Notes: generated from the sequence alone by a model not told the origin. A stretch of DNA of 63,756 nucleotides from Asterias rubens (GCF_902459465.1 NC_047072.1:2914001-2977756), one strand, 5' to 3'. Positions 4,780 through 50,879 are shown, numbered from the stretch's first letter. Numbers and translations are program-made.

Positions 4780-5780
4780 GACCCCGTTTACACTAGATCC
4801 CGTAAGCCGGATCAGACCCGGATCGAATCCGGCAAGGTGCTAAACGCAAAAATGCCGGGCCAGACCCGGGTCCGTATCCATCAATTTCAATCCACCTTTT
4901 GAGGAGGGTTGAATCCGGCAATTGGTGGATTAAGGTCCGGCAATGTGGATTCAAATACAAGTGTACACGCAAAGGTGGGTTAGACACGGCAATTCGAGGT
5001 GGTCATTTCCGGTTTCGTTAGGAATGGCGCGCTTTTCTCTTCGCCGAATTATTATTTTGTGAGCGTCTTCGTTGTTGTGATGGATGGCATTCACAGTGCA
5101 CATGGGCTGTGCGTGTGTGAAACGTTTTGTTGTTTTTAGCGTCCCTAAAATACATACATTGCTACCTTCGGAGCTTGCCTTGTTGCTGTATTTGGTTAAA
5201 TTTGCTATCTATTGTACCTCCATTGTCATTGTTGACTGAAACATTTACACGTTTTGGGAGTAAATAACATGATTTTCGAGAGTGAACTTTTCAAAATATC
5301 CCAACAATCTTGACAACTATAGCTCGTTTGAGAAGTACACCCGTTCTCATAATTGTGGTCGAACAAATGATTTGCAACGCTACCACGTAACGTGATCGAG
5401 CACATGCACAAACGTTTGGGTACGAAAACTAGATTATATTGATACAACTGAATTGGTGCCAGACTGATTTACTCGACGCTCCGGCCGAGTACAAGAATCT
5501 TCACATAATACTTTTCTTTTTCGCCAATTGTTACAGATCGCTCCGTCATTTATCTTTGTTGATGTAGGCCTACATGTACCTTGAAGAAAGTATGGCGCGC
5601 TAAAATCGTGAACCTTGAGCTATTTCCGAGGAGCGGTGACGTCACTGCCAATAAACAACCTGTTTAAAAGTGTGATCGGAGCCGGATTACTGGTGTAAAC
5701 GCGACAATGGATCGTGATCCGCGGTCGTAAAAAAATGAAGAAACTCAATCCACCTTTCTGGATCTAGTGTAAACGCGGTC
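4780..5780. mobile_element. 1-kb non-autonomous TIR element with 3-bp TSD (PIF/Harbinger-like) inserted in the LINE
   Basis: 21-bp TIR GACCCCGTTTACACTAGATCC / GGATCTAGTGTAAACGCGGTC (1 mismatch); CTT duplicated at 4777-4779 and 5781-5783; subterminal (A/G)TCCGG motifs. Confidence 0.85.
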
Positions 5781-7502
5781 CTTGACTCACTCACATTCCG
5801 CCATCTTTCAGCTCGTACCGACCCCATTGTTCCATTCACCCTCCCATTTATACGTTGTTTCAACATTAAGTTTCTATGCTGAAACAACGTTGAATTTGCA
5901 AATCGTTTTAACGTTGAAATGCCGACGTAAAAACAACGTTAAAATCACAATGTAGAAACAATGGCTCTTTAATTACCTAATTAATTAACTATTTATTTAT
6001 TTATTTATTTCAGGTAATTATCATGACTACAACCTATCAAGGTCAATACATTTATACACACTGTATGTCTTGTATATATGTAGACCAGGATCCCTAAATT
6101 TTCAAGTCATGGTTTTACTCCGTTTTTAGCTAAAAACTGCTTAATTATTAATTTAAATGTTTAAATTACAAATTTTTGCTTGGACTTTTGTTGTTCGTAT
6201 TTTTTTACATTCGAATTAAACACAAAAGTACAGAAACTTCCCTCGGATAACTTAATTATACCAAATTGTTTTATTATCAAAAACACACTTCTAGGCCACG
6301 TGACCCCAAATTTGCATATTATGTCAACGTTAAACCAACGTTGGATCAAGGTATTTAGAAATGCTCCCCATAGAAAACTATATCACAGCGCTTACAAAAA
6401 CTTAATGCACATTAAACAACAAAAACTTAGCGGAAAAGCTACATACACAATGTTCGAAAAAATGAGAAAAAGAGAAAAGCTTAAACAGGGAAGAGATGTG
6501 TTTTCAGAAGTTTGTTTAATTGGTCTGTGGATTTGTCTTAACTTCCATGCTGTGGATGCAGTTACAGTGAATGTGCGATCGCCAGATTGCTACGGGTCCT
6601 ATAGGAATGGTAAGCAAAAATGGATCTCGAGAAGAGCGAAGACTATGGCGAGATGGGGTATGAAATGTAAAGCAACCCTTGATATTATAATGGCGTCTGG
6701 TCATGGAAGGCTTTAAAAACAAACAAAAGTACTTTGAAGAGAATTCTTTCTTTTATACGGGAAGCCAGTGGAGACATTGGAAAGCAACACATTATGCTTT
6801 CCGCTATTGCTTTTGAATCCATTTACAGGAAAGCAGTGATTGTGACATGGCCTTCACAGATAATTTCGCCGGCCTTATCCCGAAATCTCTGCCAGCAAGT
6901 TGTATAATTTTATTCAGAACACAAAAATTGTGTCACATATTTTGGTGAGTGCACGAACCCTTCCCACCGAGACATAAATTTTCCACAAAAGATGACATGT
7001 TCATGCCACAATGATTATAAAATAAACATGGCAATTTGTTAAACTGCCCATTGGAAGGATGAGCATTGATTTTAGTTGGTTATTATGCAATGCAATAACA
7101 ACCTTTATCCAATTTGTGAAACTACCTCGACTTCGTCTCGGTAAAATTATCAAGAACCAGGCCTCGGCGGGGTTAAACCACTAGGTGAAAACCTCTTCAC
7201 CACACATTGATTCCCTTATTGTGTGTTGGACAATTTTTGAACATCCAGCTTCTCACTGAAACTTCATGTTAGGCCTGCCTCGGTTATGAGGAATGACAAG
7301 AAGCTAACACCTGATGAAACACTACCGATCACCCTCACTCCAATCCCCAGACCTAAAAAATGGACCGTTAAACTGAACACTCCTCCTCCGTTGTCAGCTT
7401 ACCACATTTTAACAGCAAAAGCACTATAGGATGATGCCATCAACAAGTACCTGGTCAATTTCAAATTGTGCCAAAAGTGCACGAGCGATATCACTCACTC
7501 AC

Positions 7503-9380: not shown

Positions 9381-9606
9381 CGCATGCTTAAGCCCTTTTT
9401 GCAACGACGGCTTCGGTTTTGGATTCAGCTCAGGCTAGCTTGGCCCGGCCGGTTGATTTGACAATTTTGCGTGTGCCTTGCGTATGCGCTACGCGCTCAG
9501 GGCACGTTTTATCCAATATCATTGTATCCAATGGAATCACTGGATCTAAATAGCAGGTATCTCTTTTTATCCTTGCGGATAAAGACATGGGCCCATAGTT
9601 CCTTAC

Positions 9607-11936
9607 CTTCACACAAACCAGCAGGTCACTTCTGTCTTTCTCTCGCCTCCCATGATTCCTGACACGATTATTAGAGTACACAATGACGCCGATTGTGTAG
9701 ATAAGGCAAGCTGAGTTAACGGAGAGGATGACGGCTACCGGTAAACCGAACGTGATCAGGGAGTGTTCCAGACTCTCAATCCAACAGAAGGTCCCCCCAT
9801 AGTGCATCCCTGTGGATGGATACAGACTCGCCACGAAGCACGCTGTAACGAAGACGAAGGGGCAGCCCCAAGCATACAGGCTAAGCTTGAATAACACTAA
9901 CCGTTGTTGAAGATTATCACGCCTTCGTGGTACTTGATGAAGCTTGATGGCAAGGCTTCCTGCTATGACGTTCATCCAGCAGAAGACAACCAACCAGGAG
10001 AAGTGAAGAAACACAGCTCTCAATGTACACAACCATGGAGTGGTGGTATTCCCAAGGAGGAGTGTAAAATCAGATATGATCAAGGCCACGACAAGGTGGA
10101 TCACACAGCTACCGGGAAGGGTACGTAGTGATGGGAAGATGCAGTAGGTAACCAGAGTGAAAAGAAGACCTCCTAGTGAAAGAGACTCTCCAATCTTACT
10201 CAACGTGTACAACGACTCAGGGAACAGATCTCGAATTGATTGGCCGGAGTCTGTGAGATTACACACCTTGACCAGATTACCCGGTAGAAGCCAAAATTCA
10301 GTCCAGTTCAGAACGTGACCAGAAGACGTGTGAATAAGTGCTTCCCTTGACTGGTCCATCTGAAAATAACTTTGGTTCGTCACGAAGCAGTCATTCTGGT
10401 CACCTGCAAGAGGGCTGCATACCTTTACAGAAGATGACGTAGATACAAATAATGCATCGTAAATAAAATGGCTATTATTGACTCTGAATGTGGTTTGGTG
10501 AATAAGATCCCTTTGTTTGAATGGCAAGTCATTTTCCAGATATACCGAGAAAGTGTAATTGTCTTCCCGAGACACCTGCTCAAGATTTACGTTTTCAACA
10601 ATGTATCCATCACACTCCGGTATCTCTGGATGTGTTTCGTTGATTGGCTGCTCGGACATGATCAATGTGACGTACGTAATGACGTCATCACTCCCCTCGC
10701 ATTGAAATGCATCCCCTTGAGGGTCGAACCTCTGTTCCAGGAAAGTTTCCAAGGATTCCAAAACGCGCGAAGCTTCCTCATAGTGAGCTAAGACAACCAA
10801 TATAAATGACGGTTTTGCCCGAGAAGGAATCGAGCGACTTGGTGTGGTTCTCGCTATCCACTCTTCCAACCCAATGGCAAATATAGCAATCGGTAAATGC
10901 AGGTTATATAACGTCGTCTCCAAATGATTCCCAAGACACAGACGGGATTCATTGAGTTTTACAGGGCCAAAGGTAGCAACTTCATCGACGGATCTATACG
11001 GAATGGGTCTGCAAAAAAGTTCAAATGGATCAAACAAAGTGTTTGGACCGCACTCTCCATGTCGTTCGATGATGCCATTTGCAAGAACACTTGTATGAGA
11101 CTCGCCACCAGGTATTCCACCAAAATAAAACAGAATCAACAGACTTCGTTCAAGCAATTGTCCAAAAAAGGGTTCTGGTATGCATGAGAATGATGTATTG
11201 GGAAATGCGTTACAGTCGATACATGTAGGGTTTTTCACAGCTAAGCGGTTATTAACGTCAAATAAGAAAGCAGTGATGTCGTGACAAGTGCTTTGGTTGG
11301 TCTGTGGCGTGGAGTTATTTCCAGACGTTGAAGGGCAATAGTCAATGAAATTGGGCTGGCACAGGTGTGGGTCGGCGGACACATCGTCGGGAGGCAATGC
11401 CAAAAAGCATTGACCCTTTTTAGGGCAAAGGTACACACCCGAGGACCACATTTTAAGAGTACCAACATCTACCCCATGACACATGGCACAATAGATGTTC
11501 CTGAAAACAGTTCCATCCGGACCGGATCCGTACAAAGAAAAGAACCTTTCGGAGTTGAGTCCAACGTCCTCACAAAAGCCTCTAACCTCATCCGAAAATG
11601 TCCAATGTTCCGGACATCTTGTGACAGCCCAGTAACTATCGGTAAATGAGTAATAATTATCTTCGCTGTCCTGTTGGGTCAAACAGCTCACATACGGGGA
11701 GTAGACTGAAGCGGTAATGGGTTGCGTTTCACCGACGTCTTGTTTGACACAGTTCTCCCAATAATCTTGACAGCAGTCATTGTAGAGGGCGCATCGGCGG
11801 TCGCAGCGACAACTGTAACGAGGCTCTGTTGGTGATCGGGAATTAATAATGACACCCACATTGTCTGAGATTCTGTCTCCGCAAGACGGTCCACAGAGGT
11901 ATATAGATTCATCACACGGTAAAGTGACTAGCTCCC
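9607..11936 (-). CDS. Large exon (SMB domain, Cys-rich glycosylated ectodomain, TM1-TM5) of family-B/Methuselah-like GPCR
   Basis: Uninterrupted ORF; SMB motif SCRCDRRCALYNDCCQDYWENC; TM motifs LRTLPG, C...AVFLHFSWLVVFCWM, YAWGCP, YGGTFCWI; acceptor TTTGCAG|GG (phase 1) at 11936; donor AAG|GTAAGG at 9607; signal-peptide exon not found. Confidence 0.92.
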
Positions 11937-12899
11937 CTGCAAAGTGCAATGTTAAACACAAGTATATGTAACACATTGATACTTTCTCATAATGAATCTA
12001 CACTTACATTATGAGTGGGATACTTTTAAACATTAGGTGACCTAATTATCCATTATTCAAATATTGGGGCATCATGAGAAACTACTTTTACATATTATTA
12101 ACCGTATTAATTTCTTCGAAATTAAATATTTCTCAAAATTATGTATACTCAAATCCCTCCATTTAATGAACTTTGGTACCAGGTAGTTTTATATGCATTG
12201 CATTGGATGACAACAAACAGTAATGCTTTCCCAAACCCCAGGCAGTGCAGGCACCTCCTGCATAAACATAGCCTTGACCAAGGCTGTGTAGGACTGGCTG
12301 TGTCCCTTCAGGGCCACCATATAAAACCGTTGAGCAACGATAACCCTCAGCCACCTGGATGCTATACACAACTAGTCCCCATCAGACTAACTCTAAAAAT
12401 AGCACACTGCACTCTTCACCCACACACACAGCGCCTGTGTACACACACAGGCATGTTTATGGTGCAGACCGAGGACTTCTTTGTTCTCCCATTTTCCAGA
12501 CGTCCCCATTGGTTTTATACACAAAATCTACCGAGGACTGTTAAGAATATTTGGTCTTTGAGACAGACCGTTGATTCTTTTTTTTTCCTACACGATTAAG
12601 TAACATGTAAACATTCATTTTAAATGGTGGTCGTGTTTTCTTAGACATCGCCACAAATCTGAAAATCTGATCCGGAGAAAAGAACAATCCCTAACTTTGA
12701 ATTGAATAGACAATCTGAGAAGCGTTATCCCAGATTCAAATTTTGGAGCATAGAAACTACTTTTACATATTACCGTAATACTTCGAAATGAAATACTTGA
12801 AATATTATGTATACTTGCAAAAGCTGCTGTAGGCAGGCTTCTAACCCATACTTGTTATTCATTAATCTTTAGAGCGTCCAACAAACGTGTCCCCTCAAT

Positions 12900-32070: not shown

Positions 32071-33507
32071 ATGGCAAACGCTAGCGACACTCCTGCTGAA
32101 GAGTACCAGTTTAGGAGCGACCATCCTCCTACATTAACTCCACAACGCCCAATACAGTCTTCCCTCCCTCCACAAAGAACACGTCGACATCCAACCTCGC
32201 TCCCAGAAGAGTTTTTGAGTGATCTGGTTGAACTCCGGAAACGTGTCAGCCAGAATTTTACCGACACATTTCGGCAACAACCACAACTGCAACCACATCA
32301 AAACGCTGTCAGAAGTACTCCCCAACGACACTCTTCTTCATTCATGGAACTACCAAGCACGCCAAAACCACCACTAGTGCAAACACACTACCCATCACAT
32401 GTCAATGATTCTCCTTCAAACCCTGTCAACAGCAGTGGAGCAATGCCAAGACGATATTCTTCTTCCTTCACAAACTTGCCAAGAACGAGACACAATCCTC
32501 CTAGCCCTTCTTCTCACCAACCCAGACGTCTCTCTTCATCTACTTCAAACCAACAATCTCAACATCTCCAGTTGATGCCTTCCCATCAGGTGAAAAACAT
32601 TCCTACCTTCACTGGAAGTGAAAAGAATACATCAGTTGACGATTGGGTGCGAGATGCGGAGTACTTGCTGGACACAACAGCTATTCCAAAAGAGCTTCAG
32701 TTCTCAACAGTTGTGCGGTACCTGGGAGGCGCAGCCAGAAAACTCATCCTGAACCTACCCAAAGAGCTACAGAATCCGACAGATGCGTTTGCTGAGCTCA
32801 AAGCTCAGTTTGGCGACTTATTGTCCGGAGGAGACCCTTTAGCAGAGTTTTACGAGAGAGTCCGCCGCCCAAACGAGTCAGCAAGCATCTATGCTGTTGA
32901 ACTGGAAGCAACCCTACGACTCACAGAGGAGCGCATGTACAGACAAATTTCCCCGCCAGACCGAAACCGAATGCTAACACAGCAGTTCATGAGAGGAGTG
33001 AAAGACGACAAGATACGACAGAGACTCGCCCCAATGAAACCTCGGGACATGGCATTTCGTGAGATGCAAGCAGAACTCCGACTCATAGAACGGGAACACA
33101 GACTGGACTCTGCTCTAACTAACAGACCATCAAGAACCCAAGCACAACCACAAACATCGACATCACCCATCCAATCAGCCTTTCCTTCAGAACAGAAGCC
33201 TCTCCTTCGTGAACAGATAGCTCGACCACATTCTGCTATCAGCCAGAAACCAGAGTATAACCCAGACCTGATGCAAGATGTCATACTTCAAATGCAGCAT
33301 CTGACCCGACAAGTGGACAACTTCACACGACAACGTAGGGCTGTTCAACCCACAGTACAGCCAAACCTTCAGAACCAGAACAACAGAGTGTTTGTGTGCT
33401 ACAAGTGCGGTAATGAAGGCCACATCGCAAGAGGATGTCGTAGCCCCCCTTTAAACGACCAGGGCCAGCGGTCACAGGGCACACCGCCAGAGCCCCGCAA
33501 CCACTAA
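32071..33507 (+). CDS. gag: Gypsy Gag (PNMA-like capsid + CCHC knuckle)
   Basis: 478-aa ORF; PTFTG..VDDWVRDAEYLL capsid-like region; CYKCGNEGHIARGC zinc knuckle. Confidence 0.92.
   Translation: MANASDTPAEEYQFRSDHPPTLTPQRPIQSSLPPQRTRRHPTSLPEEFLSDLVELRKRVSQNFTDTFRQQPQLQPHQNAVRSTPQRHSSSFMELPSTPKPPLVQTHYPSHVNDSPSNPVNSSGAMPRRYSSSFTNLPRTRHNPPSPSSHQPRRLSSSTSNQQSQHLQLMPSHQVKNIPTFTGSEKNTSVDDWVRDAEYLLDTTAIPKELQFSTVVRYLGGAARKLILNLPKELQNPTDAFAELKAQFGDLLSGGDPLAEFYERVRRPNESASIYAVELEATLRLTEERMYRQISPPDRNRMLTQQFMRGVKDDKIRQRLAPMKPRDMAFREMQAELRLIEREHRLDSALTNRPSRTQAQPQTSTSPIQSAFPSEQKPLLREQIARPHSAISQKPEYNPDLMQDVILQMQHLTRQVDNFTRQRRAVQPTVQPNLQNQNNRVFVCYKCGNEGHIARGCRSPPLNDQGQRSQGTPPEPRNH
33450..33495 (+). promoter_or_regulatory. 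-1 programmed ribosomal frameshift signal (T TTA AAC + predicted H-type pseudoknot)
   Basis: Heptamer 33450-33456 in gag frame; pol frame is -1 and open from here; S1 GCGGT(33468-72)/ACCGC(33483-87), S2 GGGC(33477-80)/GCCC(33492-95). Confidence 0.8.
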
Positions 33508-36500
33508 GCCCTTCTGCATCTGTAAAACCTCAACTAGCCCATTTCAAGCCAGAATACCAGAAGCTGATTGGACCACAAAATGAAGAGACAATCAAGATAC
33601 ATGGAACAAAGTGCAGAGCTCTCATCGACTCAGGATCACAGATCACATCCATCACATCCGACTTATGGAAGTCCCACCCGAGCCTTAGAAACCTAGAACT
33701 GACAACAGCTGACGTAATCATAGAAGGAGCAAGTGGATCGGCAGTTCCGTACCTGGGTGTAATTCCTATCACCTTAGAAGCTATGGGGTTCATCTACCAA
33801 GACGTACCTGCATTTGTTGTGCCTACCGATCCCTACAGAGCACAGGTTCCACTCCTTATAGGTACTAACGTGATACGAGCATCCAAGAAAGATCAACAAC
33901 AAGAAAGAGGTCAATCCTTCATGAAACTTGTACAGGAAGAGAGTAAAGCCTGGCACACAGCCTACGTCAATTTATCTTCTTCAAATCAGGACAGCCAAAG
34001 CGGAAAGATGGGATATGCTATGTATACTGGAAGCCACTCCCGATGCATCCCCGCTGGAGAAGAAGTTGATGTCATGTGCCAAGCTCCACCAAATCCAGCA
34101 GGCGGCTCTTACACGGCTATCATCGAAGGTGCCCAAAACAACCGCGCATCTTGTCTGAGAATTGGCTGCACTGTAACTGACATCGGTCCTGACCGTCAAC
34201 TCCCGGTCAGGGTACACAACATCTCTTCCAAACCAATCTCCATCAGAAGAAACTGCAATCTGGCACAAGTTTCGTATGTCCTCGCTGTTGAAGATACGAC
34301 ACCAACTCTTCATCCAACTACCACTCCTCTCCTTCATGGCGGGCCGGCTGGTAGAGTGAACTCCATCTCATCCATTATTTTGGATGAACTGATTCCATCA
34401 CTCGACTTAGCCAGTTCTGCCTTGCAAGATGACATGAACAAGAAGAAGCTCGCTGATCTCCTTCATAAGCATAACAGCATCTTCTCCAAAGACTCTCTAG
34501 ATTTTGGCTGTACATCTACTGTGAAGCACTGCATACCACTCGTCGACAATAGACCAATCAAACTTCCGTACAGACGCATACCACCGAGTCAGTACCAAGC
34601 TGTCAGGGAGCACTTGAAAGGCATGGAGCAGACCGAAGTCATTCGATGAAGCAGCAGCCCGTACGCCTCCCCATTGGTCATTTCGCACAAGAAAGACGGT
34701 TCTCTCAGGATCTGCATCGATTACAGGAAGCTCAACAGCAAGACCATTCTTGACGCCTACCCACTCCCAAGGATAGAAGAAGCCCCCGACGCTCTTGGTA
34801 ACGCCTCTATCTTCACAACCCTTGACTCAACGTCAGGCTACTGGCAAGTAGAAATGGACAAAAAGGACAAAGCAAAGACCGCGTTTACCACTCCGATGGG
34901 TCTCTACGAATGCAACCGCATGCCATTCGGTCTCCAGAACGCTCCTGCTACTTTCCAGCGCCTAATGACGATGTGCCTCGGTGAGCTGAATTACTCAACT
35001 TGTTTGCTCTACCTCGACGACATCATCGTCTTTTCATCCACATTTGACGAGCATATTGAGCGCTTGGATCAGGTCTTCACGTGTCTCCTTCAACATGGAC
35101 TGAAACTCAAGCCTCAAAAGTGCCACTTACTCCAGTCAGAAGTCAAGTATCTGGGACACATCGTCTCTTCGAAAGGTGTGTCCACTGACCCTGAAAAGAT
35201 CGAACAGGTACGGGAATGGCCAACTCCAACCACTCACAAAGAACTACGAAGCTTCCTAGGGTTCACTGGGTACTACCGTCGCTACGTGAACGGCTATGCG
35301 AAGATAGTTGCACCACTGTACAAGCTCACGGCAGGCAACCCGACACGACGAAAAGGAAAACAGGCACCTACCAAACCACCCCCTTATATCTGGACAAAAG
35401 AGACACAAGCATCGTTTGACCAGCTGAAACAAGTGATGATTTCAGCCCCCATCCTCGGTTACGCTGACTACAAGAAGCCTTTTCTTCTTCAAACCGATGC
35501 TTCTGGTGTTGGGCTTGGAGCGGTCCTCAGTCAGATCCAAGATGGACAAGAACGCGTCATAGCCTACGCCAGCAGAGGTTTAAATCCAGCAGAGTCGAGA
35601 TATCCAGCACACAAGCTAGAATTCCTGGCAATGAAATGGGCAGTAACGGATAAGTTTAGAGACTACCTTCTCGGCAGTACTTTCACTGTGTACACCGACA
35701 ACAATCCGTTACTCTACGTCACCACCACAGCTAAGTTGGACGCAACAGGCCAACGGTGGGTTGCTGCCCTTTCTCAGTTCTCCTTCACTGTGAAGTATAA
35801 ACCTGGTAAGAACAACGCAGTCGCAGATGCTCTCTCCAGAAAACAACACCCAGTTCCATACTCTACGTCAGTCTCCTTCACAACACAACCTGCTGATGAT
35901 GTCCCAAAACCCCTCTCCTTCACAACAGAGATTCCAACCGATGTGGTCAATGCCATATGTACTGGTCACCCCAATACAGGCCAACTCTTCATAGAGCCCG
36001 CAAACTGTCAAGTCACAACCAGAGGACAGGCAAAGCTTCTCAATCCCAAACCAGTAACCAATGAGACAGACGAAATGCCAAGGCTAACTACCAAGCAAAT
36101 TGCCCTTGCACAACGTGATGATCCAGATATATCACGAGTCCTATTCTTCCTCGAACACGGTCAGAAACCAAATCAACAACAGCGAAGCAGAGAGACAACT
36201 GAATGTAAGATCTACTTCAGACAGTGGGACAAGCTAAGTCTTAAAGAAAACATCCTCTACAGAGTTCGTAAGACAACCGACGACACACTCTCACACCAAC
36301 TTCTCCTTCCTAAGTGTTACCGAGCAACAGCCATGTCCGGTCTACACGATGACATTGGCCATCTGGGTTTTGAACGAACGCTAGATATGATCCGTAACAG
36401 GTTCTTCTGGCCCAGAATGGCTAAAGATGTCAAAGACTGGTGTGTGAAGTGTAAACGTTGTTGTCTTCGAAAAACATCTCCTTCAAAAGTCAAAGCTCCA

Positions 36501-37511
36501 CTCGTCTCCATCTTCAGTACAGAACCCCTTGAGCTCATCTGCATCGATTACCTCAAACTAGAACGGAGCGAAGGTGGTTTCGAAAACGTACTTGTCATCA
36601 CAGACCACTTTACCAAGTACGCTCAGGCATTTGCGTCACGAGACCAGAAAGCGGAAACAGTAGCAAAAATACTTTGGGAGAACTTCATCTTACATTATGG
36701 CTTCCCTACTCGCATACACTCCGACCAAGGCCGAAATTTCGAAAGCCAGCTCATCCAGGAATTGTGCAAGGTCTCTGGCATAAAGAAGAGCAGAACAACA
36801 CCGTACCACCCTCAAGGAAACGGCGTTACGGAGAGGTTCAACTCTACTCTCCTTAACATGTTGGGCACACTGGAAGAGGAACAAAAGAGAGATTGGAAGA
36901 AGTATGTGGGCGTCATGACGCATGCGTACAACGCGACGCGTCACGACACCACGGGGTACGCACCATTCTTTTTGATGTTCGGACGCCATCCCAACTTGCC
37001 GATAGACCTCTTGTTTGGTTGCCACTCACCAACTGATGAAGCGCCAGAGTATGACGAGTACGTGGAAGAGTTCAGAGAAAGATTACTGTTTTCATATGAC
37101 CAAGCCAACAAAACTTCACATCACGCAAAAGCCAAACAGAAACGCATCTATGACAAGAAAACCCAAGAAGCCCCACTCCGAGCAGGCGATCGAGTCCTTG
37201 TGCAAGTGAAACACTTCGAAGGAACACACAAATTAGCAGACCGATGGGAATCTAACCCCTACACGGTCGTCACCAAACACGAAAACATTCCTGTCTACAA
37301 GGTACGCTCACTAGGGGATGGAAAGGAGAGAACAGTACACAGAAACCTTCTCACCCCGTGTATGTTCTTCCCCATGTCTTCTTCAGAAAACTCTCCTTCA
37401 GAAAACTTTTCTTCAGCCACGTCTCCTTCATCAGACAGAGAAGAGAAACTGGAGAGAGGGAGGCAGTTGTTGGCAGTATGGAAGAGTCGCCAGATGACTA
37501 GAACAAAGTAG
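33450..37511 (+). pseudogene. pol: Gypsy Pol (protease, RT, RNase H, integrase) with one in-frame TGA at 34647-34649
   Basis: ALIDSGSQIT protease; YLDD at 35010-35021; QTDASGVGLGAVL RNase H; HHCC zinc finger and D-D-E (ICIDY, HSDQG, VTERFN); ORFs 33783 and 34674 are in the same frame. Confidence 0.93.
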
Positions 37512-43560: not shown

Positions 43561-44149
43561 TGCTTTATTAAATTTATAAACTTTTTTTTTTTTTTTTTTT
43601 TTTTTTTGGGGGGGGGGGTGTGCTTAATTATAATGTGGTAACCCATTGTGCAGTAGCATGACCGCAGTTGAAAAAAACGCCAACAACGAGGCAACCGTCC
43701 GGAAAAGTGACTACCGATTACCCGGTTGCCACTTGTTTGTGTTGTAAAGTGGCTCAGGTACGAGAAAACTCTGTTAAAATAACAGTGGTCGTCATACGAC
43801 GGCATACAACCCTTTTGTGTATGTTCGGTCATGGAAGTAGAAGTGTTTATGTTCGATGTTATTAGTGCTATCGGTGCTAAACCGATTCTGAAATGAACAG
43901 CCCCCCTCTTGTGACAGACGGTCGTGAATCAAATCTGTGCATGCGAACCACAGCGACAGCGTTCTATATCTTGGAAAGATAACCAGGCTGAACTCAGCAC
44001 TAAATTTAGTGCTAGCACCAAATTTGTTGCTGGCGAGAAATTTGGTGCTGGCACCAAATTTCAAAACAACCTGTCAACACACCGTCATGACGAAGCAACG
44101 GCGGCGCGACAACAACCGTTACAGGCAGTAAGAGGTAATATGGTATGTT

Positions 44150-45972
44150 AAATGTTTTCAAAGTAAAATCGATAAATCTTAAGATTTTTCTTCACAGATG
44201 TCTTCCTAGATCCCAAACCATCACACCTAGGCGCCCCTAATGAATACTTTGGCTAATTAGCTCAGCCCAACTAATTAAACATTTGCATAATATAGCCTGT
44301 ACGCACATTCTGTATACGAAAAAAGCGCAAGTATCGAATAGAACCAATTTTAATTTGAAATGTTTTCAAAGTAAAATCAATAAATCTTCAGATTTTTCTT
44401 CACAGATGTCTTCCTTAGATCCCAAACCATCATACCTAGGCGCCCCTAATGAATAGATTGGCTAATTAGCTCAGCCCAACTAATTAAACATTTGCATAAT
44501 ATAGCCTGTACGCACATACTATATACGAAAAAAGCGCAAGTATCGAATAGTACCAATTTTAATTTGAAATATTTTCAAAGTAAAATCGATAAATCTTAAG
44601 ATTTTGCTTCGCAGATGTCTTCCCTAGATCCCAAACCATCATACCTAGGCGCCCCTAATGAATAGATTGGCTAATTAGCTCAGCCCAACTAATTAAACAT
44701 TTGCATAATATAGCCTGTACGCACATTCTGTATACGAAAAAAGCGCAAGTATCGAATAGAACCAATTTTAATTTGAAATGTTTTCAAAGTAAAATCAATA
44801 AATCTTCAGATTTTTCTTCACAGATGTCTTCCTTAGATCCCAAACCATCATACCTAGGCGCCCCTAATGAATAGATTGGCTAATTAGCTCAGCCCAACTA
44901 ATTAAACATTTGCATAATATAGCCTGTACGCACATACTATATACGAAAAAGCGCTAGTATCGAATAGTACCAATTTTAATTTGAAATGTTTTCAAAGTAA
45001 AATCAATAAATCTTCAGATTTTTTTTCGCAGATGTCTTCCCTAGATCCCAAACCATCATACCTAGGCGCCCCTAATGAATACTTTGGCTAATTAGCTCAG
45101 CCCAACTAATTAAACATTTGCATAATATAGCCTGTACGCACATTCTATATACGAAAAAAGCGCAAGTATCGAATAGTACCAATTTTAATTTGAAATGTTT
45201 TCAAAGTAAAATCATTAAATCTTCAGATTTTTTTTCGCAGATGTCTTCCCTAGATCCCAAACCATCATACCTAGGCGCCCCTAATGAATACTTTGGCTAA
45301 TTAGCTCAGCCCAACTAACTAAACATTTGCATAATATAGCCTGTACGCACATTCTAACATACGAAACAAGCGCAAGTATCGAATAGTACCAATTTTAATT
45401 TGAAATGTTTTCAAAGTAAAATCGATAAATCTTGAGATTTTTCTTCACAGACATCTTCCTTAGATCCCAAACCATCATACCTAGGCGCCCCTAATGAATA
45501 GATTGGCTAATTAGCTCAGCCCAACTAATTAAACATTTGCATAATATAGCCTGTACGCACATTCTATATACGAAAAAGCGCGCAAGTATCGAATAGTACA
45601 AATTTTAATTTGAAATGTTTTCAAAGTAACATCGATAAATCTTAAGATTTTTATCACAGATGTCTTCCTTAGATCCCAAACCATCATACCTAGGCGCCCC
45701 TTATCAATAGATTGGCTAATTAGCTCAGCCCAACTAATTAAACATTTGCATAATATAGCCCGTATAACGCACATTCTAATATACGAAACAAGCGCAAGTA
45801 TCGAATAGTACCAATTTTAATTTGAAATGTTTTCAAAGTAAAATCGATAAATCGTCAGATTTTTCTTCACAGATGTCTTTCTTAGATCCCAAACCATCAT
45901 ACCTAGGCGCCCCTAATGAATACTTTGGCTAATTAGCTCAGCCCAACTAATTAAACATTTGCATAATATAGC
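44150..45972 (+). repeat. Left arm array, ~209-bp unit x9
   Basis: CCTAGG at 44226, 44435, 44644, 44853, 45061, 45270, 45480, 45689, 45902. Confidence 0.95.
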
Positions 45973-46174
45973 GCCCTCTTGTGATCAACCTTCGTCATTT
46001 TGCCTACGAAGCAACGGCGGCGCGATAACGGCCGTTACTGGCAGTAAGAGATACTATGGTATGTTAAATGTTTTCAAAGTAAAATCAATAAACCTTCAGA
46101 TTTGTCTTCGAAGATATCTTCCTTAGCCCCAAGGCCGCCATGGTACTGGAGAACCATATACACAATACACAGAC

Positions 46175-48118
46175 ATGTTCAAATCATTGAAAAAATCTAA
46201 ACATCAAAATATTTCATCAAACAATAGAACGCAAGGAATAATTGAAAAAAACATGGGTGAGGTCAAACGGGTTAAACTGCAGTATGACAGATGTAGTAAA
46301 CTACATGTTCTTGTTTCAATTTTCCAGAATGATTTGTTACCACTACATCGAGAATTCGCAGAAAGCTTTTGCAAGGCTCGTAACAAGAAAACAAAGTCTC
46401 AAAAATTAGCTTCCGAAAAATGGCTCAAGAGGGTTCGCCGACCAGGAAAAGAGGGAAAATACCTGACACCCCCAACCAAAAAAATGAAATTTAAAGAAGG
46501 ATCATGTGAACAAAAGAAACAGGTTTCAACACAACAATTTCCACAAACAAGCACACCAATCTTAAGAAAGGACAATAACAAACAGCGAAACAAAATGACC
46601 ACAACAAAAAATAATTCTGATTATCGGCCACTTTTTCCACTTAGGAGAGGAATATCAAATAATTCATATTCTTGTTGGTGGATTGCATCTATTCAAGTGC
46701 TCTTATCTCTGTACCTACAACTTCGTGGAACTGCTAGTCAGATACCTAACTTGAATGAGTTCAAAAGAAGTCTCATGTTCATATTTAATCAACTGAAAGA
46801 TGAAATAGGGCATTCAGTTCCCTTTCATTCGGTTAAAAAAAGTATCGGTCTATGTGCCTCGTTCCTTTCTGTTAGTGTCCAACGACAGCAAGACGCAGCT
46901 GAATTTCTAACTTGTGACGAGGTATGCAGTTTTTTTCACGATGCAGGATTATCGCCACGTTTTGTATTACAGAAGACATCACGATGTGCGTTGTGTGACA
47001 GAGCCTCAACTAAATCAACTGTCTTGACCATTCCTGCAACAAATTCATGTTTAGATAATAACATCAACAGTTTTTTCAGATGCGTGCGTCTGCCCGACGA
47101 GTTGTGTACGCATCGTGTAAATATTGGAGTGAAAACGGTAACTACCAAAATATTACACGCACCTTCAGTGTTACTCATTCAACTAATGCGTTTTCGTTGG
47201 AGAGATTCAAGAGCCGAAAAAGTTACGACCACAATCCAGGTTCCCGATACTGTGGACCTCACACAAATGTGCATGACTAAAAACGAACCAACTAAATATC
47301 GCCTTATCTCAGTAGTTGTACATGTTGGGGGAACTGTTGAAGGTGGCCACTACGTGACATATGTGAATGACAGAAGCTACAAAAGAAAGCTGTTGTTCGA
47401 TGATCACATAGTTCGTCAAGTAACTGACGAAGAATATAACAAAGCTATCGATGAGGGAGCATACATACTGATATACCAAAAGCACAACGATTCATCAGAG
47501 AGGCACACAAAAACACAATCCAGATTGTCTCCAATAACAACAGAGAGCTCTGAGTTGAGAGGAGATCCCAATTTCTTCTACAATTTTGATGAAAGTTACA
47601 TTTCCCCAAACGAAGAGGACCCTTTCGATCAAAGTAATACTTTCACAGTAAAAAAAAATGAGAAGATCTTCGTAGAAAATGTTTGGGGTTACATAGATGA
47701 GAGCCTAATAAACAAACAGGCAGTAAAGTTGAGGTCTTCGAACGAAATTTTGACATTCGCCCATATTGCCATGCTAAATGTACACATACCGGCCGCTGTG
47801 TATCAATCCTTCATAAAACTGTCACCAAACTTCAACCGGGGACGGATTAGTGATTTCTTTGTAGATTTCTACACGCAACAATTGGCTGAAAGTGAGGAAG
47901 TAAGTCAAACATGTGCTGCACTATTGTGCTGTGAAACAAGTGCAATTCTCACGGGAGATGTGACAGCCGCGACATACCGTTCGGTGCAGAGAAAATGTTT
48001 CGTCAGCGGTCATTGGTGCGACATCATCTATTCATTAGGGGCGACTAGGTATGATGGTTTGGGATCTAGGGAAGACATTTGTGAAGAAAAATCTGAAGAC
48101 TTAGTGATTTTACTTTGA
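46175..48118 (+). CDS. USP (peptidase C19) domain protein with transposase-like N-terminal remnant and truncated Ulp1/SENP-like C-terminus
   Basis: GISNNSYSC(167)WWIASIQVL Cys box, QQDAAEFL, YRLISVVVHVGGTVEGGH(392)YVTY His box, LLFD(409)DHIV; then ISDFFVDFY...SGHWC; last ~30 codons are read-through into the right array. Confidence 0.88.
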   Translation: MFKSLKKSKHQNISSNNRTQGIIEKNMGEVKRVKLQYDRCSKLHVLVSIFQNDLLPLHREFAESFCKARNKKTKSQKLASEKWLKRVRRPGKEGKYLTPPTKKMKFKEGSCEQKKQVSTQQFPQTSTPILRKDNNKQRNKMTTTKNNSDYRPLFPLRRGISNNSYSCWWIASIQVLLSLYLQLRGTASQIPNLNEFKRSLMFIFNQLKDEIGHSVPFHSVKKSIGLCASFLSVSVQRQQDAAEFLTCDEVCSFFHDAGLSPRFVLQKTSRCALCDRASTKSTVLTIPATNSCLDNNINSFFRCVRLPDELCTHRVNIGVKTVTTKILHAPSVLLIQLMRFRWRDSRAEKVTTTIQVPDTVDLTQMCMTKNEPTKYRLISVVVHVGGTVEGGHYVTYVNDRSYKRKLLFDDHIVRQVTDEEYNKAIDEGAYILIYQKHNDSSERHTKTQSRLSPITTESSELRGDPNFFYNFDESYISPNEEDPFDQSNTFTVKKNEKIFVENVWGYIDESLINKQAVKLRSSNEILTFAHIAMLNVHIPAAVYQSFIKLSPNFNRGRISDFFVDFYTQQLAESEEVSQTCAALLCCETSAILTGDVTAATYRSVQRKCFVSGHWCDIIYSLGATRYDGLGSREDICEEKSEDLVILL

Positions 48119-50030
48119 AAACATTTCAAATTAAAATTGGTACTATTCGATACTAGCGCTTTTTCGTATATAGTATGTGCGTACAGGCTATATTATGCAA
48201 ATGTTTAATTAGTTGGGCTGAGCTAATTAGACAATCTATTCATTAGGGGCGCCTAGGTATGATGGTTTTGGAATCTAGGGAAGACATCTGCCAAGAAAAA
48301 TCTTAAGATTTATTGATTTTACTTTGAAAACATTTCAAATTAAAATTGGTACTATTCGATACTCGCGCACTTTTTCGTATATAGAATGTGCGTTCGGGCT
48401 ATATTATGCAAATGTTTAATTAGTTGGGCTGAGCTAATTAGCCAATCTATTGATAAGGGGCGCCTAGGTATGATGATTTGGGATCTAAGGAAGATATCTG
48501 TGAAGAAAAATCTGAAGATTTAATGATTTTACTTTGAAAACATTTCAAATTATAATTGGTACTATTCGATACTTGCGCGCTTTTTCGTATGTAGAATGTG
48601 CGTTATACGGGCTGTACTATGCAAATGTTTAATTAGTTGGGCTGAGCTAATTAGCCAATCTATTCATTAGGGGCGCCTAGGTATGATGGTTTGGAATCTA
48701 GGGAAGACATCTGCCAAGAAAAATCTTAAGATTTATTGATTTTACTTTGAAAACATTTCAAATTAAAATTGGTACTATTCGATACTCGCGTTTTTTTCGT
48801 ATAAAGAATGTGCGTTCGGGCTATATTATGCAAATGTTTAATTAGTTGGGCTGAGCTAATTAGCCAAAGTATTCATTAGGGGCGCCTAGGTATGATGGTT
48901 TGGGATCTAAGGAAGACATCTGTGAAGAAAAATCTGAAGATTTAATGATTTTACTTTGAAAACATTTCAAATTATAATTGGTACTATTCGATACTTGCGC
49001 GCTTTTTCGTATGTAGAATGTGCGTTATATGGGCTATATTATGCAAATGTTTAATTAGTTGGGCTGAGCTAATTAGCCAAAGTATTCATTAGGGGCGCCT
49101 AGGTATGATGGTTTGGGATCTGGGGAAGACATCTGCCAAGAAAAATCTGAAGATTTATCGATTTTACTTTGAAAACATTTCAAATTAAAATTGGTACTAT
49201 TCGATACTTGCGCTTTTTTCGTATATAGAATGTGCGTTATATGGGCTATATTATGCAAATGTTTAGTTAGTTGGGCTGAGCTAATTAGCCAATCTATTCA
49301 TTAGGGGCGCCTAGGTATGATGGTTTGGAATCTAGGGAAGACATCTGCCAAGAAAAATCTTAAGATTTATTGATTTTACTTTGAAAACATTTCAAATTAA
49401 AATTGGTACTATTCGATACTCGCGTTTTTTTCGTATATAGAATGTGCGTTCGGGCTATATTATGCAAATGTTTAATTAGTTGGGCTGAGCTAATTAGCCA
49501 AAGTATTCATTAGGGGCGCCTAGGTATGATGGTTTGGGATCTAAGGAAGACATCTGTGAAGAAAAATCTGAAGATTTAATGATTTTACTTTGAAAACATT
49601 TCAAATTATAATTGGTACTATTCGATACTTGCGCGCTTTTTCGTATGTAGAATGTGCGTTATATGGGCTATATTATGCAAATGTTTAATTAGTTGGGCTG
49701 AGCTAATTAGCCAAAGTATTCATTAGGGGCGCCTAGGTATGATGGTTTGGGATCTGGGGAAGACATCTGCCAAGAAAAATCTGAAGATTTATCGATTTTA
49801 CTTTGAAAACATTTCAAATTAAAATTGGTACTATTCGATACTTGCGCTTTTTTCGTATATAGAATGTGCGTTACATGGGCTATATTATGCAAATGTTTAA
49901 TTAGTTGGGCTGAGCTAATTAGCCAATCTATTCATTAGGGGAGCCTAGGTATGAGGGTTTGGGATCTAAGGAATATTTCTTCGAAGAAAAATCTGAAGGT
50001 TTGTTGATTTTACTTTGAAAACATTTAACA
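48026..50030 (-). repeat. Right arm array, inverted ~210-bp unit x10
   Basis: Reverse complement of the left unit (TTAGGGGCGCCTAGGTATGATGG) repeated ten times. Confidence 0.95.
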
Positions 50031-50879
50031 TACCGTAGTACCTCTTACTGCCTGTAACGGTTATTATCGCGCCGCCGTTGCTTCGTCATGACGGTGTGTT
50101 GACAGGTTGTTTTGAAATTTGGTGCCAGCACCAAATTTCTCGCCAGCACCAAATTTGGTGCTAGCACTAAATTTAGTGCTGAGTTCAGCCTGGTGAAAGA
50201 TAGCAGTAGGCTTACCGCTACGATTGTTCGTACTTCTAACCAAATATCGTATAGCGCCGCGTAGCGGCGCAAGATAGATAACTCAACGCAGACGCAGTGC
50301 AAATACGTGAAGTAATCGTGGGGGCCAGCGGACGCCATTCTGGCAAGGTGAGACATGTGAAATGTCCCGGATGTTGATGTAAACAAACGCGAAGAGTGAC
50401 CGGGTGCATGTGCACGATCATCTGATCTCACTCCTTTTTTTCACATCAGATGGCCAATAAGTACAAATGATGATTGTTTTTTAAGGTAAATGTCAACTTC
50501 TCGGATTCATTAATGACTGCCAAGATTATATCGCCATTTTATATCGGCATTTTATATTATGCTTAGATTTAGAAGAATTTATGACAATTATGACTATCCT
50601 ATTGTTGTGATAAAACTCAAACGTTTGAAAAGAACTACATCAAATTGGGGCTTGTTTGTCCCTGTTGTCCCTTTTTACAGCTCCATCCATTGTTTAAACA
50701 ATTACAATACAATGACAAGCCTGCCTGCAACTATTTTATTTACAAAATTGTTGTCAGTTGTCACAACAGAGACTAAGATAAGACTACACTGTAAAAATGG
50801 ACTGCACATCATGCACTTGTGGGACAGCAGATATTTGTCCCAAAATCATGAACACTTGAGGCACTTATTTCATGCACCT

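What the first reader, a model, noticed from the sequence alone, without database searches (positions are those of the whole stretch)
43982..50194. Foldback-type transposon carrying an intact ubiquitin-specific protease (plus a truncated SUMO-protease-like domain)
Seen: an exact 8-bp TSD and ~2-kb inverted arms made of ~209-bp tandem units enclose a stop-free 647-codon ORF. Its USP domain keeps the Cys box (C167), QQDAxEFL, His box (H392) and Asp (D409). Downstream it runs into ISDFFVDFY...SGHWC, which resembles the N-half of a Ulp1/SENP (C48) protease, and is cut by the right array 7 bp after HWC. The frame extends upstream to 46133 (GRHGTGEPY..QNISSNNRTQGIIEK), which I recall as resembling NOF/Foldback-like (MULE-related) transposase C-termini. 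Known: C48 proteases are carried by Rehavkus/NOF-type MULEs and by Zisupton (8-bp TSD). Inference: the parent element encodes a transposase-USP-Ulp1 polyprotein, i.e. a transposon able to remove both ubiquitin and SUMO (for example to stabilise its transposase or counter silencing). This deletion derivative lost the catalytic transposase but kept a translatable deubiquitinase.
Basis: partly seen in the sequence, partly recalled or inferred. Interest (0 to 1): 0.88.

Follow-up and report, generated by a model that had tools for sequence, protein, structure and literature searches.

The report
Foldback transposon remnant keeping a deubiquitinase
This is a real, internally deleted Foldback-type (Mutator/NOF-like) jumping gene whose longer relatives encode one protein joining a transposase to a ubiquitin protease and a SUMO-type protease, a combination I could not find described, although this particular copy is a decaying leftover.

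Summary
An exact 8-bp target duplication (GAAAGATA), 226-nt terminal inverted repeats and two inverted ~2-kb arrays of ~209-bp units enclose a 647-codon ORF with a Pfam-significant USP domain (Cys167, His392 and Asp409 present).

Near-identical longer copies (98%) continue upstream into a DDE transposase core and downstream into a complete Ulp1/SENP (C48) domain, and are flanked by the same arrays. One copy has 1087 uninterrupted codons. At least five more divergent lineages (about 25-49% identity) carry a USP with the transposase and/or C48, one in the order transposase-C48-USP.

The transposase has no Pfam match, but its predicted fold is closest by far to the Drosophila NOF-FB protein, then to MULE-derived FAR1/ZSWIM proteins and IS256 transposases. 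It is therefore Mutator/NOF-type, not Zisupton or hAT.

Deep dN/dS is 0.22-0.54 in all three domains, so the USP is a maintained part of the element and not captured cargo.

The window copy lacks both catalytic Asp of the transposase and all C48 catalytic residues. It also has changes at conserved sites, including a USP zinc-ribbon Cys.

Unexplained: 38 of 40 coding differences among young copies are nonsynonymous.

The scan has noted this family elsewhere in this genome.

The parts
43974..43981 (.). Left target-site duplication, GAAAGATA
   Evidence: Identical 8-mer on both flanks.
43982..44207 (+). Left terminal inverted repeat. It consists of a unique flanking domain (43982-44149) holding about 3.7 copies of a palindromic 18-mer (43996-44061), followed by the first array unit.
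   Evidence: 226 nt, 94% complementary to 49969-50194. 18-bp repeats from TRF. The terminal 26-mer is found only at the two ends.
44150..45972 (+). Left arm: tandem array of 8.7 units of 209 bp, with a 417-bp higher-order period
   Evidence: TRF score 3221, 94% matches. Nine hits of the unit core motif on the + strand.
45973..46131 (+). Inner end of the left arm: a second direct copy of the subterminal flanking-domain segment plus a partial unit. The left deletion breakpoint lies at 46131/46132.
   Evidence: Aligns to 44085-44215 and to the right-end equivalent. Homology to the long forms starts at 46132. Long-form contigs have loose ends exactly at 46132.
46132..48027 (+). Retained internal segment of the family's single gene, 98.1% identical to the long copies
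   Evidence: BLASTN against L002, L003 and L004. X1 contigs bridge both junctions.
46175..48118 (+). 647-codon ORF. It starts at an internal Met and ends at a stop codon inside the right array.
46133..46540 (+). C-terminal tail of the transposase (GRHG...NRTQGIIEK motif, which holds the putative catalytic Glu). Both catalytic Asp lie upstream and are deleted here.
   Evidence: Aligns to the transposase tail of L001, L004 and fish proteins. USP-less relatives match only this part.
46649..47476 (+). USP (peptidase C19) domain with the Cys box (C167), QQDAAEFL, His box (H392) and Asp (D409). The fourth zinc-ribbon Cys is changed to Arg.
   Evidence: Pfam UCH 2.3e-29. Nearest solved USPs are USP8, USP18, USP15 and USP7. 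USP fold of the long form, E=1e-23. C314R.
47660..48027 (+). Non-catalytic N-terminal half of a Ulp1/SENP (C48) domain, cut off just before the catalytic His
   Evidence: In the long forms the same sequence continues into a Pfam C48 match and aligns to SENP1, including His, Asp and Cys. There is no Pfam hit in the window copy itself.
48026..50026 (-). Right arm: 9.5 units of 213 bp, inverted relative to the left arm
   Evidence: TRF score 3320. Inverted-repeat pairs at 92-97%. Ten motif hits on the - strand.
49969..50194 (-). Right terminal inverted repeat
50195..50202 (.). Right target-site duplication, GAAAGATA

Best explanation
The 6.2-kb element is a non-autonomous, internally deleted copy of a cut-and-paste DNA transposon. 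It belongs to the NOF/Foldback-like branch of the Mutator (MULE) superfamily.

Shown:
- It inserted with an 8-bp target duplication. Its arms are Foldback-style: a terminal domain followed by about 2 kb of 209-bp tandem units in inverted orientation.
- The family carries one long gene. In order, it encodes a WRKY-like zinc-finger DNA-binding domain, an RNase-H-fold DDE transposase, an alpha-helical tail, a USP (C19) domain and a Ulp1/SENP (C48) domain.
- The window copy keeps only the transposase tail, the USP domain and the non-catalytic half of C48. Two deletions with breakpoints in the arms removed everything else.
- The USP is a long-maintained, selected part of the element. It is not captured host cargo.

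Inferred:
- The copy can move only if a full-length transposase, supplied in trans, recognises its termini and probably the repeated arm units.
- In autonomous elements, the two isopeptidases remove ubiquitin and SUMO (or related modifiers) from the transposase itself or from host chromatin, repair or silencing proteins. This would protect the transposase or blunt SUMO- and ubiquitin-dependent repression.
- In this copy the 647-codon USP ORF is most likely a young relic that has begun to decay, not a working gene.
For: Structure of the element.

Long forms:
- L002, L003, L004 and L010 match window 46132-48027 at 98%. They extend upstream to the first DDE motif (YLDATGS) and downstream through a complete C48 domain. 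The same array follows on the right, and an inverted array lies on the left.
- L004 has 1087 uninterrupted codons.
- Public runs hold both forms. X1 contigs bridge both window junctions. X6, X8, X17 and X14 continue into long-form sequence exactly at 46132 and 48027.

Same architecture in divergent lineages:
- L001, L008 and L009: DBD, DDE, USP, C48.
- P0002, P0032/L006, and P0006 plus P0013 on one contig.
- L005: a 2078-codon ORF ordered transposase-C48-USP.
- USP-less relatives with transposase plus C48, with or without PHD, in fishes.

Superfamily:
- AF2 model with pLDDT 71. The best reviewed fold match is the Drosophila NOF-FB 120.7-kDa protein (E=7.5e-22, residues 20-705). FAR1/FHY3/FRS, ZSWIM and IS256-family transposases follow.
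- In the PDB the best matches are the ISCth4 transposase (IS256 family) and WRKY DNA-binding domains.
- ESM Atlas features point to MULE.
- Invariant D, D and CxxH columns in the core alignment.

Selection: L004 against L007 gives dN/dS of 0.36 overall, 0.22 for the transposase, about 0.54 for USP and 0.43 for C48.

Decay of the window copy: private changes at conserved A175, C314 and W557, plus a 4-codon deletion.

Literature:
- Foldback elements are grouped with Mutator, with TSDs of 8-10 bp (PMC3169594).
- Tetris has about 220-bp repeats in its TIRs and 8-9-bp TSDs (PMC4079207).
- Ulp1 is known in Mutator elements (PMC2836005).
Against: - No Pfam transposase family (MULE, KDZ, hAT) matches any family member, even at E<=10. 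The superfamily assignment therefore rests on predicted structure and motifs.
- No demonstrably autonomous copy of the window's own family was recovered. All four long copies lack the N-terminal ~340 aa (DNA-binding domain) seen in L001, because the left array abuts the first DDE motif.
- Activity and substrate of both proteases are untested.
- RNA evidence is only low-depth fragments in metatranscriptomes, which could be DNA carry-over.
- The near absence of synonymous differences among young copies does not fit simple neutral decay.
Confidence: 0.85

Rival explanations
1. The short form is not a relic but a functional derivative. It would express a stand-alone protein (transposase tail plus USP), either a regulator of the family analogous to truncated repressor-producing deletion derivatives of other DNA transposons, or a deubiquitinase that benefits the element or the host. 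This protein would be evolving under positive, diversifying selection.
For: - The 647-codon frame is open, with the catalytic Cys, His and Asp intact.
- The same short form is present in an independent run, X1.
- A window-type fragment lacking the 12-nt insertion occurs in a metatranscriptome.
- All 31 coding differences in the shared segment are nonsynonymous. For 29 of them, a spectrum-matched neutral simulation gives P(0 synonymous) of about 3e-4. Fourteen of the 19 window-private changes arose on the window lineage.
Against: - Window-derived changes hit residues conserved across all divergent relatives (A175V, zinc-ribbon C314R, W557R), which looks like loss of constraint.
- There is no promoter evidence, and RNA depth is only 2-8 and may be DNA.
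- The count of sites is small, and the comparison copies are metagenome consensus contigs.
- The control family shows ordinary neutral ratios.
Confidence: 0.1
2. The USP is host cargo captured by a Foldback or Pack-MULE-type element, or a host retrogene trapped between two arrays. On this reading it has nothing to do with the transposon's own biology.
For: - MULEs are known to capture host gene fragments (PMC6446971, PMC8277862).
- The ORF is intronless.
- The window copy alone shows no transposase domain by Pfam.
Against: - The USP lies in frame between the transposase and C48 in the long copies.
- It is present in at least six lineages that are about 25-49% identical to one another.
- It is under purifying selection between species.
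- The nearest non-element USPs are only about 30% identical.
- The TSD and TIRs bound the whole unit.
Confidence: 0.03
3. The element belongs to Zisupton/KDZ or to hAT and not to Mutator/NOF, because both of those make 8-bp TSDs and Zisupton is said to carry a Ulp1 domain.
For: - The TSD is 8 bp, and Zisupton makes 8-bp TSDs (PMC12730594).
- Relatives occur in fishes.
- D...D...CxxH motifs also occur in hAT (own knowledge).
Against: - No hit to the KDZ, SWIM or hAT-dimerisation Pfam profiles.
- The fold search ranks NOF at 7.5e-22, followed by 11 FAR1/FHY3-family, ALPHA3 and ZSWIM proteins and IS256 transposases. Among hAT-type proteins, Hermes appears only at E of 0.05-0.3 in the PDB and ZMYM1 only at 6e-4.
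- The N-terminal domain is WRKY-like, as in MULEs (PMC1702500).
- Foldback and MULE TSDs range over 8-10 bp (PMC3169594, PMC4079207).
Confidence: 0.04

Closest known systems
FB-NOF of Drosophila melanogaster (Foldback arms plus the NOF 120.7-kDa protein; MULE-NOF group)
   Same: - Long inverted arms built of tandem repeats around a single large ORF.
- The transposase part of this family is by far the closest reviewed fold match to the NOF protein (E=7.5e-22 over about 690 residues).
- The TSD is in the 8-10-bp range typical of Foldback and Mutator elements (PMC3169594).
   Different: - Sequence identity to NOF is only about 16%.
- The arm unit is 209 bp. From memory, the Drosophila FB arms are built of much shorter repeats.
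- The TSD is 8 bp here.
- This family adds a USP domain. Whether NOF itself has a C48 domain could not be tested (one search returned only USPs).
Rehavkus (MULE-related group known from Repbase)
   Same: - Subterminal minisatellite arrays.
- PHD finger in relatives: fish P0005 and P0191, and P0023.
- Single ORF.
- MULE-like core (PMC6446971).
   Different: - Rehavkus is described with a 9-bp TSD and a minisatellite before the 3' TIR only (PMC6446971).
- The window's own family shows no PHD finger.
- No USP is reported for Rehavkus.
- A direct sequence comparison was not possible because Repbase was not available.
Tetris, a Foldback element of Drosophila virilis
   Same: - Almost the same arm plan: an outer flanking domain, then a variable number of about 220-bp tandem repeats, then an inner domain.
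- TSDs of 8-9 bp.
- The repeat units also form satellite-like arrays (PMC4079207). Here the array depth is far above the interior depth.
   Different: Tetris has no known coding capacity or transposase. Here the coding partner is identified.
Ulp1-bearing Mutator elements (KI-MULEs of plants; hydra and lancelet MuDR) and protease-bearing Ginger1 and Helitron elements
   Same: A ubiquitin-like-modifier protease is fused to or carried with the transposition enzyme. Known cases are Ulp1 in Mutator and Ginger1, and OTU or VTD deubiquitinases in Helitrons (PMC2836005, PMC9741609).
   Different: - Those elements carry one class of protease. This family carries a USP (C19) and a C48 protease together in one reading frame.
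- The only USP-transposase fusion I found mentioned is a Trichomonas protein with an IS5-like transposase_11 domain (PMC2836005).
Zisupton
   Same: - 8-bp TSD (PMC12730594).
- From memory, a Ulp1 domain.
- Presence in fishes.
   Different: - No KDZ or SWIM signature.
- The fold is closest to NOF, MULE and IS256 proteins.

Membership tests
Mutator superfamily, NOF/Foldback-like group | RNase-H-fold DDE transposase of MULE/IS256 type | tested here: met
   AF2 model of the L001 transposase. NOF-FB protein E=7.5e-22, followed by FAR1/FHY3/ZSWIM and IS256-family transposases. ISCth4 is the top PDB hit. Invariant D, D and CxxH columns. This holds for long relatives; the window copy keeps only the tail.
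Mutator superfamily, NOF/Foldback-like group | Match to the curated MULE sequence profile (Pfam PF10551) | tested here: inconclusive
   No Pfam transposase family hits at E<=10 or E<=1. Absence of a profile hit in a very divergent branch does not exclude membership, but membership is not shown at the sequence level.
Mutator superfamily, NOF/Foldback-like group | N-terminal WRKY/GCM1/FLYWCH-type zinc-finger DNA-binding domain | tested here: met
   WRKY DNA-binding domains match the N-terminal beta-sheet of the L001 model with probability 0.97-0.99. This feature of MULE transposases is described in PMC1702500. The domain is absent from the window copy and from L002-L004.
Mutator superfamily, NOF/Foldback-like group | TSD of 8-10 bp (most often 9) | tested here: met
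   Exact 8-bp TSD. The range is taken from PMC3169594 and PMC4079207.
Foldback-type architecture | Long terminal inverted repeats composed largely of internal tandem repeats | tested here: met
   Two inverted arrays of about 1.8-2.0 kb made of 209/213-bp units, inside 226-nt TIRs.
Rehavkus | PHD finger in the transposase protein | tested here: not met
   No PHD finger in the window's family (P0001). One is present in relatives P0005, P0191 and P0023.
Rehavkus | Sequence similarity to Rehavkus consensus transposases | not testable with these tools
Zisupton / KDZ | KDZ-type transposase and SWIM zinc finger | tested here: not met
   No PF18758 or SWIM hit in any member. The nearest folds are NOF, MULE and IS256. 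Only the 8-bp TSD agrees.
USP / peptidase C19 | UCH/USP profile above the curated threshold, with the Cys box, His box and catalytic Asp | tested here: met
   Pfam UCH 103 bits against a cut-off of 23.9. C167, H392 and D409 present. Aligns to USP8 through the His box and Asp. USP fold E=1e-23 for the long form.
USP / peptidase C19 | Isopeptidase activity on ubiquitin | not testable with these tools
   Needs an enzyme assay. The fourth zinc-ribbon Cys is lost in the window copy.
Ulp1/SENP, peptidase C48 (window copy) | Catalytic His-Asp-Cys triad with the Gln oxyanion residue | tested here: not met
   The window sequence stops 8 bp after HWC, before the His, and gives no Pfam C48 hit. The window carries only a non-catalytic fragment.
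Ulp1/SENP, peptidase C48 (long forms of the family) | C48 profile match and catalytic His, Asp and Gln...Cys | tested here: met
   Pfam C48 at 2.8e-9 (L001 ORF2), 1.1e-15 (P0032) and 9e-5 (P0001). L004 aligns to SENP1 with His, the Asp of YDSM and the Cys of SCG in place.
Pack-MULE / captured host gene | Cargo is a fragment of a host gene with a parental copy elsewhere, not part of the element's conserved gene | tested here: not met
   The USP is in frame within the element's ORF in at least six divergent lineages and is under purifying selection. The nearest other USPs are about 30% identical.

The most novel reading that the evidence does not exclude
A branch of NOF-like Foldback transposons has built a two-enzyme module, USP plus Ulp1, into its transposase to strip ubiquitin and SUMO from itself or from host silencing or repair factors. 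In the window's family this module would be in a current protein-level arms race with the host. That would explain why 38 of 40 differences among copies that are 98-99.5% identical change the protein, while long-term dN/dS stays well below 1. The short form could then be a selected stand-alone deubiquitinase or regulator and not debris.
Probability: 0.12. Interest if true: 0.85.

Novelty: new variant of a known kind. Interest (0 to 1): 0.6.

Why it matters
Several transposons are known to carry a single protease for ubiquitin-like modifiers: Ulp1 in Mutator and Ginger elements, and OTU or VTD in Helitrons. What these enzymes do for the element has never been shown.

This family carries a ubiquitin-specific protease and a SUMO-type protease fused in one frame to a cut-and-paste transposase. 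Both are kept under selection across lineages from echinoderm-like marine animals to a Tara Oceans eukaryote. USP-less sister lineages in fishes provide natural controls.

That makes the question [quoted passage not shown] directly testable by mutating each catalytic Cys in a transposition assay. It also gives Foldback elements, whose transposases are mostly unknown, a clear coding partner. Finally, it links a 209-bp satellite-like repeat to its transposon of origin.

For annotation, fish "uncharacterized proteins" such as medaka LOC105353816 can be recognised as relatives of this transposase.

Tried and rejected
- Pfam on the window protein and on all transposase parts found no transposase family at all, even at E<=10. 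The superfamily had to be assigned by structure.
- The word-indexed profile search with the transposase alignment found only 10 proteins and no named NOF or MULE.
- The metagenome scan gave only one extra locus, L007.
- Three contigs could not be read as DNA because their files were too large: P0001, P0002, and the contig holding P0013 and P0006. No complete element with both termini and the N-terminal domain was obtained for the window's family.
- I tried to see whether Drosophila NOF has a C48 or USP C-terminus by fold-searching the tail-USP-C48 model. The list was filled by cellular USPs, so the question stays open.
- Rfam found nothing in the element.
- Literature searches for a USP in MULE, NOF or Zisupton elements returned nothing specific. 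The library lacks many subscription papers, including the original Zisupton description, so 'not described' is provisional.
- The idea that the all-nonsynonymous pattern was a script bug was checked site by site and rejected.
- The idea that the pattern is general to such families was rejected by the L001-family control.
- Host-gene and Pack-MULE capture, and hAT or Zisupton membership, were considered and rejected (see the rival explanations).

Full report
**1.

- The 8-mer GAAAGATA lies directly outside both ends, at 43974-43981 and 50195-50202. Neither possible 9-mer matches.
- The ends are 226-nt inverted repeats at 94%. Their first 26 nt occur nowhere else in the window.
- Inside them lie two inverted tandem arrays: 8.7 units of 209 bp on the left (44150-45972) and 9.5 units of 213 bp on the right (48026-50026).
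- The terminal domain contains about 3.7 copies of a perfectly palindromic 18-mer.
- The ORF at 46175-48118 has 647 codons. It scores 103 bits on Pfam UCH against a cut-off of 23.9.
The junction with the right arm is 8 bp after HWC, not 7.
- The window protein itself has no Pfam match to C48 or to any transposase.

**2.

A protein search found a 985-aa protein 96% identical to the window ORF but longer at both ends, and a 438-aa relative carrying both UCH and Peptidase_C48. I fetched DNA for four near-identical long copies: L002, L003, L004 and L010.

- Window 46132-48027 aligns to them at 98.1%.
- On the right they continue for about 1.9 kb (the rest of C48 and a non-coding stretch). Then the same array begins in the same orientation as the window's right arm.
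- On the left they continue about 920 bp further into coding sequence, up to an inverted array.
- L004 has 1087 uninterrupted codons, running from the first DDE motif through USP to a complete C48 C-terminus. L002 has one stop and L003 has one frameshift.

Public runs show both forms.
- Contigs of run X1 bridge both window junctions.
- Runs X6, X8, X17 and X14 have loose ends exactly at 46132 and 48027. These read on into the upstream transposase and the downstream C48 sequence.

The window copy is therefore an internal-deletion derivative.

- Its left breakpoint lies inside arm sequence, next to a second copy of the subterminal segment.
- That breakpoint differs from the breakpoint of the L002-type copies. 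Those copies are themselves deleted, since they lack the N-terminal ~340 aa found in L001.
- I recovered no demonstrably autonomous copy of the window's own family.

**3. The architecture is conserved in divergent lineages**

- L001, L008 and L009 (34-39% identity; 7.6-7.9-kb contigs whose ends are inverted copies of each other) encode DBD, DDE, USP and C48, with one break inside the USP His box.
- P0032/L006 (about 25% identity) has the tail, USP and C48 (Pfam 1e-15), followed by 38-nt and 177-nt arrays.
- P0006 and P0013 lie on one 20.9-kb contig as DBD+DDE followed by tail+USP.
- L005, a Tara Oceans scaffold, has one 2078-codon ORF. It holds a PHD finger, the transposase, a C48-like domain with His, Asp and Gln...Cys, and then a USP. 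The protease order is reversed there.
- Relatives in fishes (medaka LOC105353816, Triplophysa LOC130559383, Pogonophryne) and P0146 have the transposase, tail and C48, often with a C-terminal PHD finger, but no USP.

C48 thus looks like the older partner. The USP appears to be an addition in part of the clade, at two different positions.

**4. Superfamily**

- No Pfam transposase model matches.
- An AlphaFold model of the L001 transposase part (pLDDT 71, core 80-95) matches the Drosophila NOF-FB 120.7-kDa protein at E=7.5e-22 over residues 20-705. Next come FAR1/FHY3/FRS proteins and the yeast ALPHA3 protein (1.8e-10 to 6e-5), ZSWIM proteins and IS256-family transposases.
- In the PDB the best matches are the IS256-family ISCth4 transposase, and WRKY DNA-binding domains for the N-terminal sheet.
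- The alignment shows invariant D (YLDATG), D (xDGS) and CxxH, and a conserved N-x-TQGIxE motif.
- ESM Atlas features also point to MULE.
- This places the family in the Mutator superfamily, nearest to NOF. Zisupton and hAT are not supported.
- The literature groups Foldback elements with Mutator and gives them 8-10-bp TSDs (PMC3169594). Tetris has the same arm plan with about 220-bp repeats (PMC4079207). Rehavkus combines a PHD finger with a subterminal minisatellite (PMC6446971).

**5. The proteases**

- The USP domain aligns to USP8, USP18, USP15 and USP7 through the His box and Asp. The long-form model has a USP fold (E=1e-23; TM by hit 0.56-0.65 to compact USPs).
- The long-form C48 aligns to SENP1 and SENP2, with the N-terminal W-x-D...FY motif, His, the Asp of YDSM and the Cys of SCG.
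- The window copy retains only the N-terminal, non-catalytic half of C48.

**6. Selection**

- Between L004 and L007 (a decayed copy from another genome, 84% nucleotide identity), dN/dS is 0.36 overall. By region it is 0.22 for the transposase, about 0.54 for USP and 0.43 for C48. All three domains have been maintained, which excludes recent cargo capture.
- The window copy has 19 private substitutions relative to the long-copy consensus (23 amino-acid differences from L004) and a 4-codon deletion. Three of the changes fall at family-conserved positions: A175V, C314R (the fourth zinc-ribbon Cys) and W557R. This points to decay.

**7. An unexplained pattern**

- Among the five young copies, 40 coding sites vary. 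Thirty-eight change the protein (one to a stop) and two are synonymous. In the segment shared with the window the count is 31 to 0.
- A spectrum-matched neutral simulation expects about 24% synonymous changes. It gives P(0 of 29) of about 3e-4.
- Every third-position change is a transversion in a two-fold codon.
- Polarised with L007, 14 of the window-private changes arose on the window lineage and 5 on the master lineage.
- The L001 family, used as a control, shows 10 nonsynonymous to 4 synonymous, as neutrality predicts.
- Caveats: there are few sites, and the comparison copies are metagenome consensus contigs.

I cannot explain this. Diversifying selection is possible but sits oddly with the hits on conserved residues.

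**8. Expression and abundance**

- Two metatranscriptomes and one probable RNA run hold low-depth fragments of the interior (depth 2-8), including a window-type fragment. DNA carry-over is not excluded.
- Array units are tens to hundreds of times deeper than the interior in all DNA runs. This suggests many coding-less copies or satellite arrays, although this depth measure is not a copy number.

**9. Novelty**

- Ulp1 in Mutator elements of hydra, lancelet and plants is known. So are Ulp1 and OTU in Ginger1, and OTU and VTD deubiquitinases in Helitrons. One Peptidase-C19 fusion to an IS5-like transposase in Trichomonas has also been noted (PMC2836005, PMC9741609).
- I found no description of a USP in a MULE or NOF-type element, or of USP and Ulp1 together in one transposase. 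The library is incomplete.
- I rate this a new variant of a known kind.

**10. Earlier scan notes**

Earlier notes on other DNA of the same genome describe a USP-Ulp1 fusion ORF, and a 16.3-kb satellite-armed Foldback with a 9-bp TSD. A follow-up agent read the Foldback as a deleted Mutator-superfamily element. My results agree with these and add the domain series, the NOF fold assignment and the selection data. One note implies that the host is a sea star; I did not test this.

**11. Context**

The window also holds an intronless adhesion-GPCR-like ORF and a Gypsy element. Nothing links the USP ORF to a flanking host gene.

Noticed in passing
window 46132-48027; L002, L003, L004, L010: Among five copies 98-99.5% identical, 38 of 40 variable coding sites are nonsynonymous (31 of 31 in the segment shared with the window). 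A neutral simulation expects about 24% synonymous (P about 3e-4 for 0 of 29). The L001 family control is neutral at 10:4.
   Followed up: partly
L005:4483-10716: A Tara Oceans scaffold carries an uninterrupted 2078-codon ORF of the same transposon clade, with an N-terminal-half PHD finger. Its domain order is transposase-C48-USP, the reverse of the window's family. The USP was therefore either acquired twice or moved.
   Followed up: partly
P0191, P0104, P0005, P0087 (fish proteins): Medaka LOC105353816, Triplophysa rosa LOC130559383 and a Pogonophryne protein are annotated as uncharacterized host proteins. They have the layout DBD, DDE, tail, C48, often followed by PHD. They are USP-less relatives of this transposase, either active elements or domesticated copies.
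   Followed up: no
window 44150-45972 and 48026-50026: In four DNA runs the 209-bp arm unit is tens to hundreds of times deeper than the coding interior. The unit probably also exists as coding-less Foldback copies or as satellite arrays, as described for Tetris/TIR-220.
   Followed up: no
window 43996-44061 and 50115-50179: Each terminus holds about 3.7 tandem copies of a perfectly palindromic 18-mer (AGCACCAAATTTGGTGCT). These are candidate transposase-binding sites.
   Followed up: no
window 45995-46126: A second, direct copy of the subterminal flanking-domain segment sits at the inner end of the left arm, next to the deletion breakpoint. This suggests template switching or a nested rearrangement during the deletion.
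   Followed up: partly
P0008, P0014-P0018, P0025: The nearest non-element USP hits include predicted proteins with 2 to 10 tandem USP domains. These are either tandem gene clusters merged by gene callers or true multi-USP proteins.
   Followed up: no
window 9430-11976 (-): Intronless 848-aa ORF with a Somatomedin-B domain and a secretin-family 7TM domain (adhesion-GPCR-like).
   Followed up: no
window 32071-37511 (+): Gypsy-type LTR retrotransposon with Gag (zinc knuckle, PNMA-like) and Pol (RT, RNase H, integrase) ORFs.
   Followed up: no
L006:2748-3094 and 5385-6138: A distant family member has 38-nt x9 and 177-nt x4 arrays downstream of its tail-USP-C48 ORF. Subterminal arrays of unrelated sequence therefore recur across the clade.
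   Followed up: no
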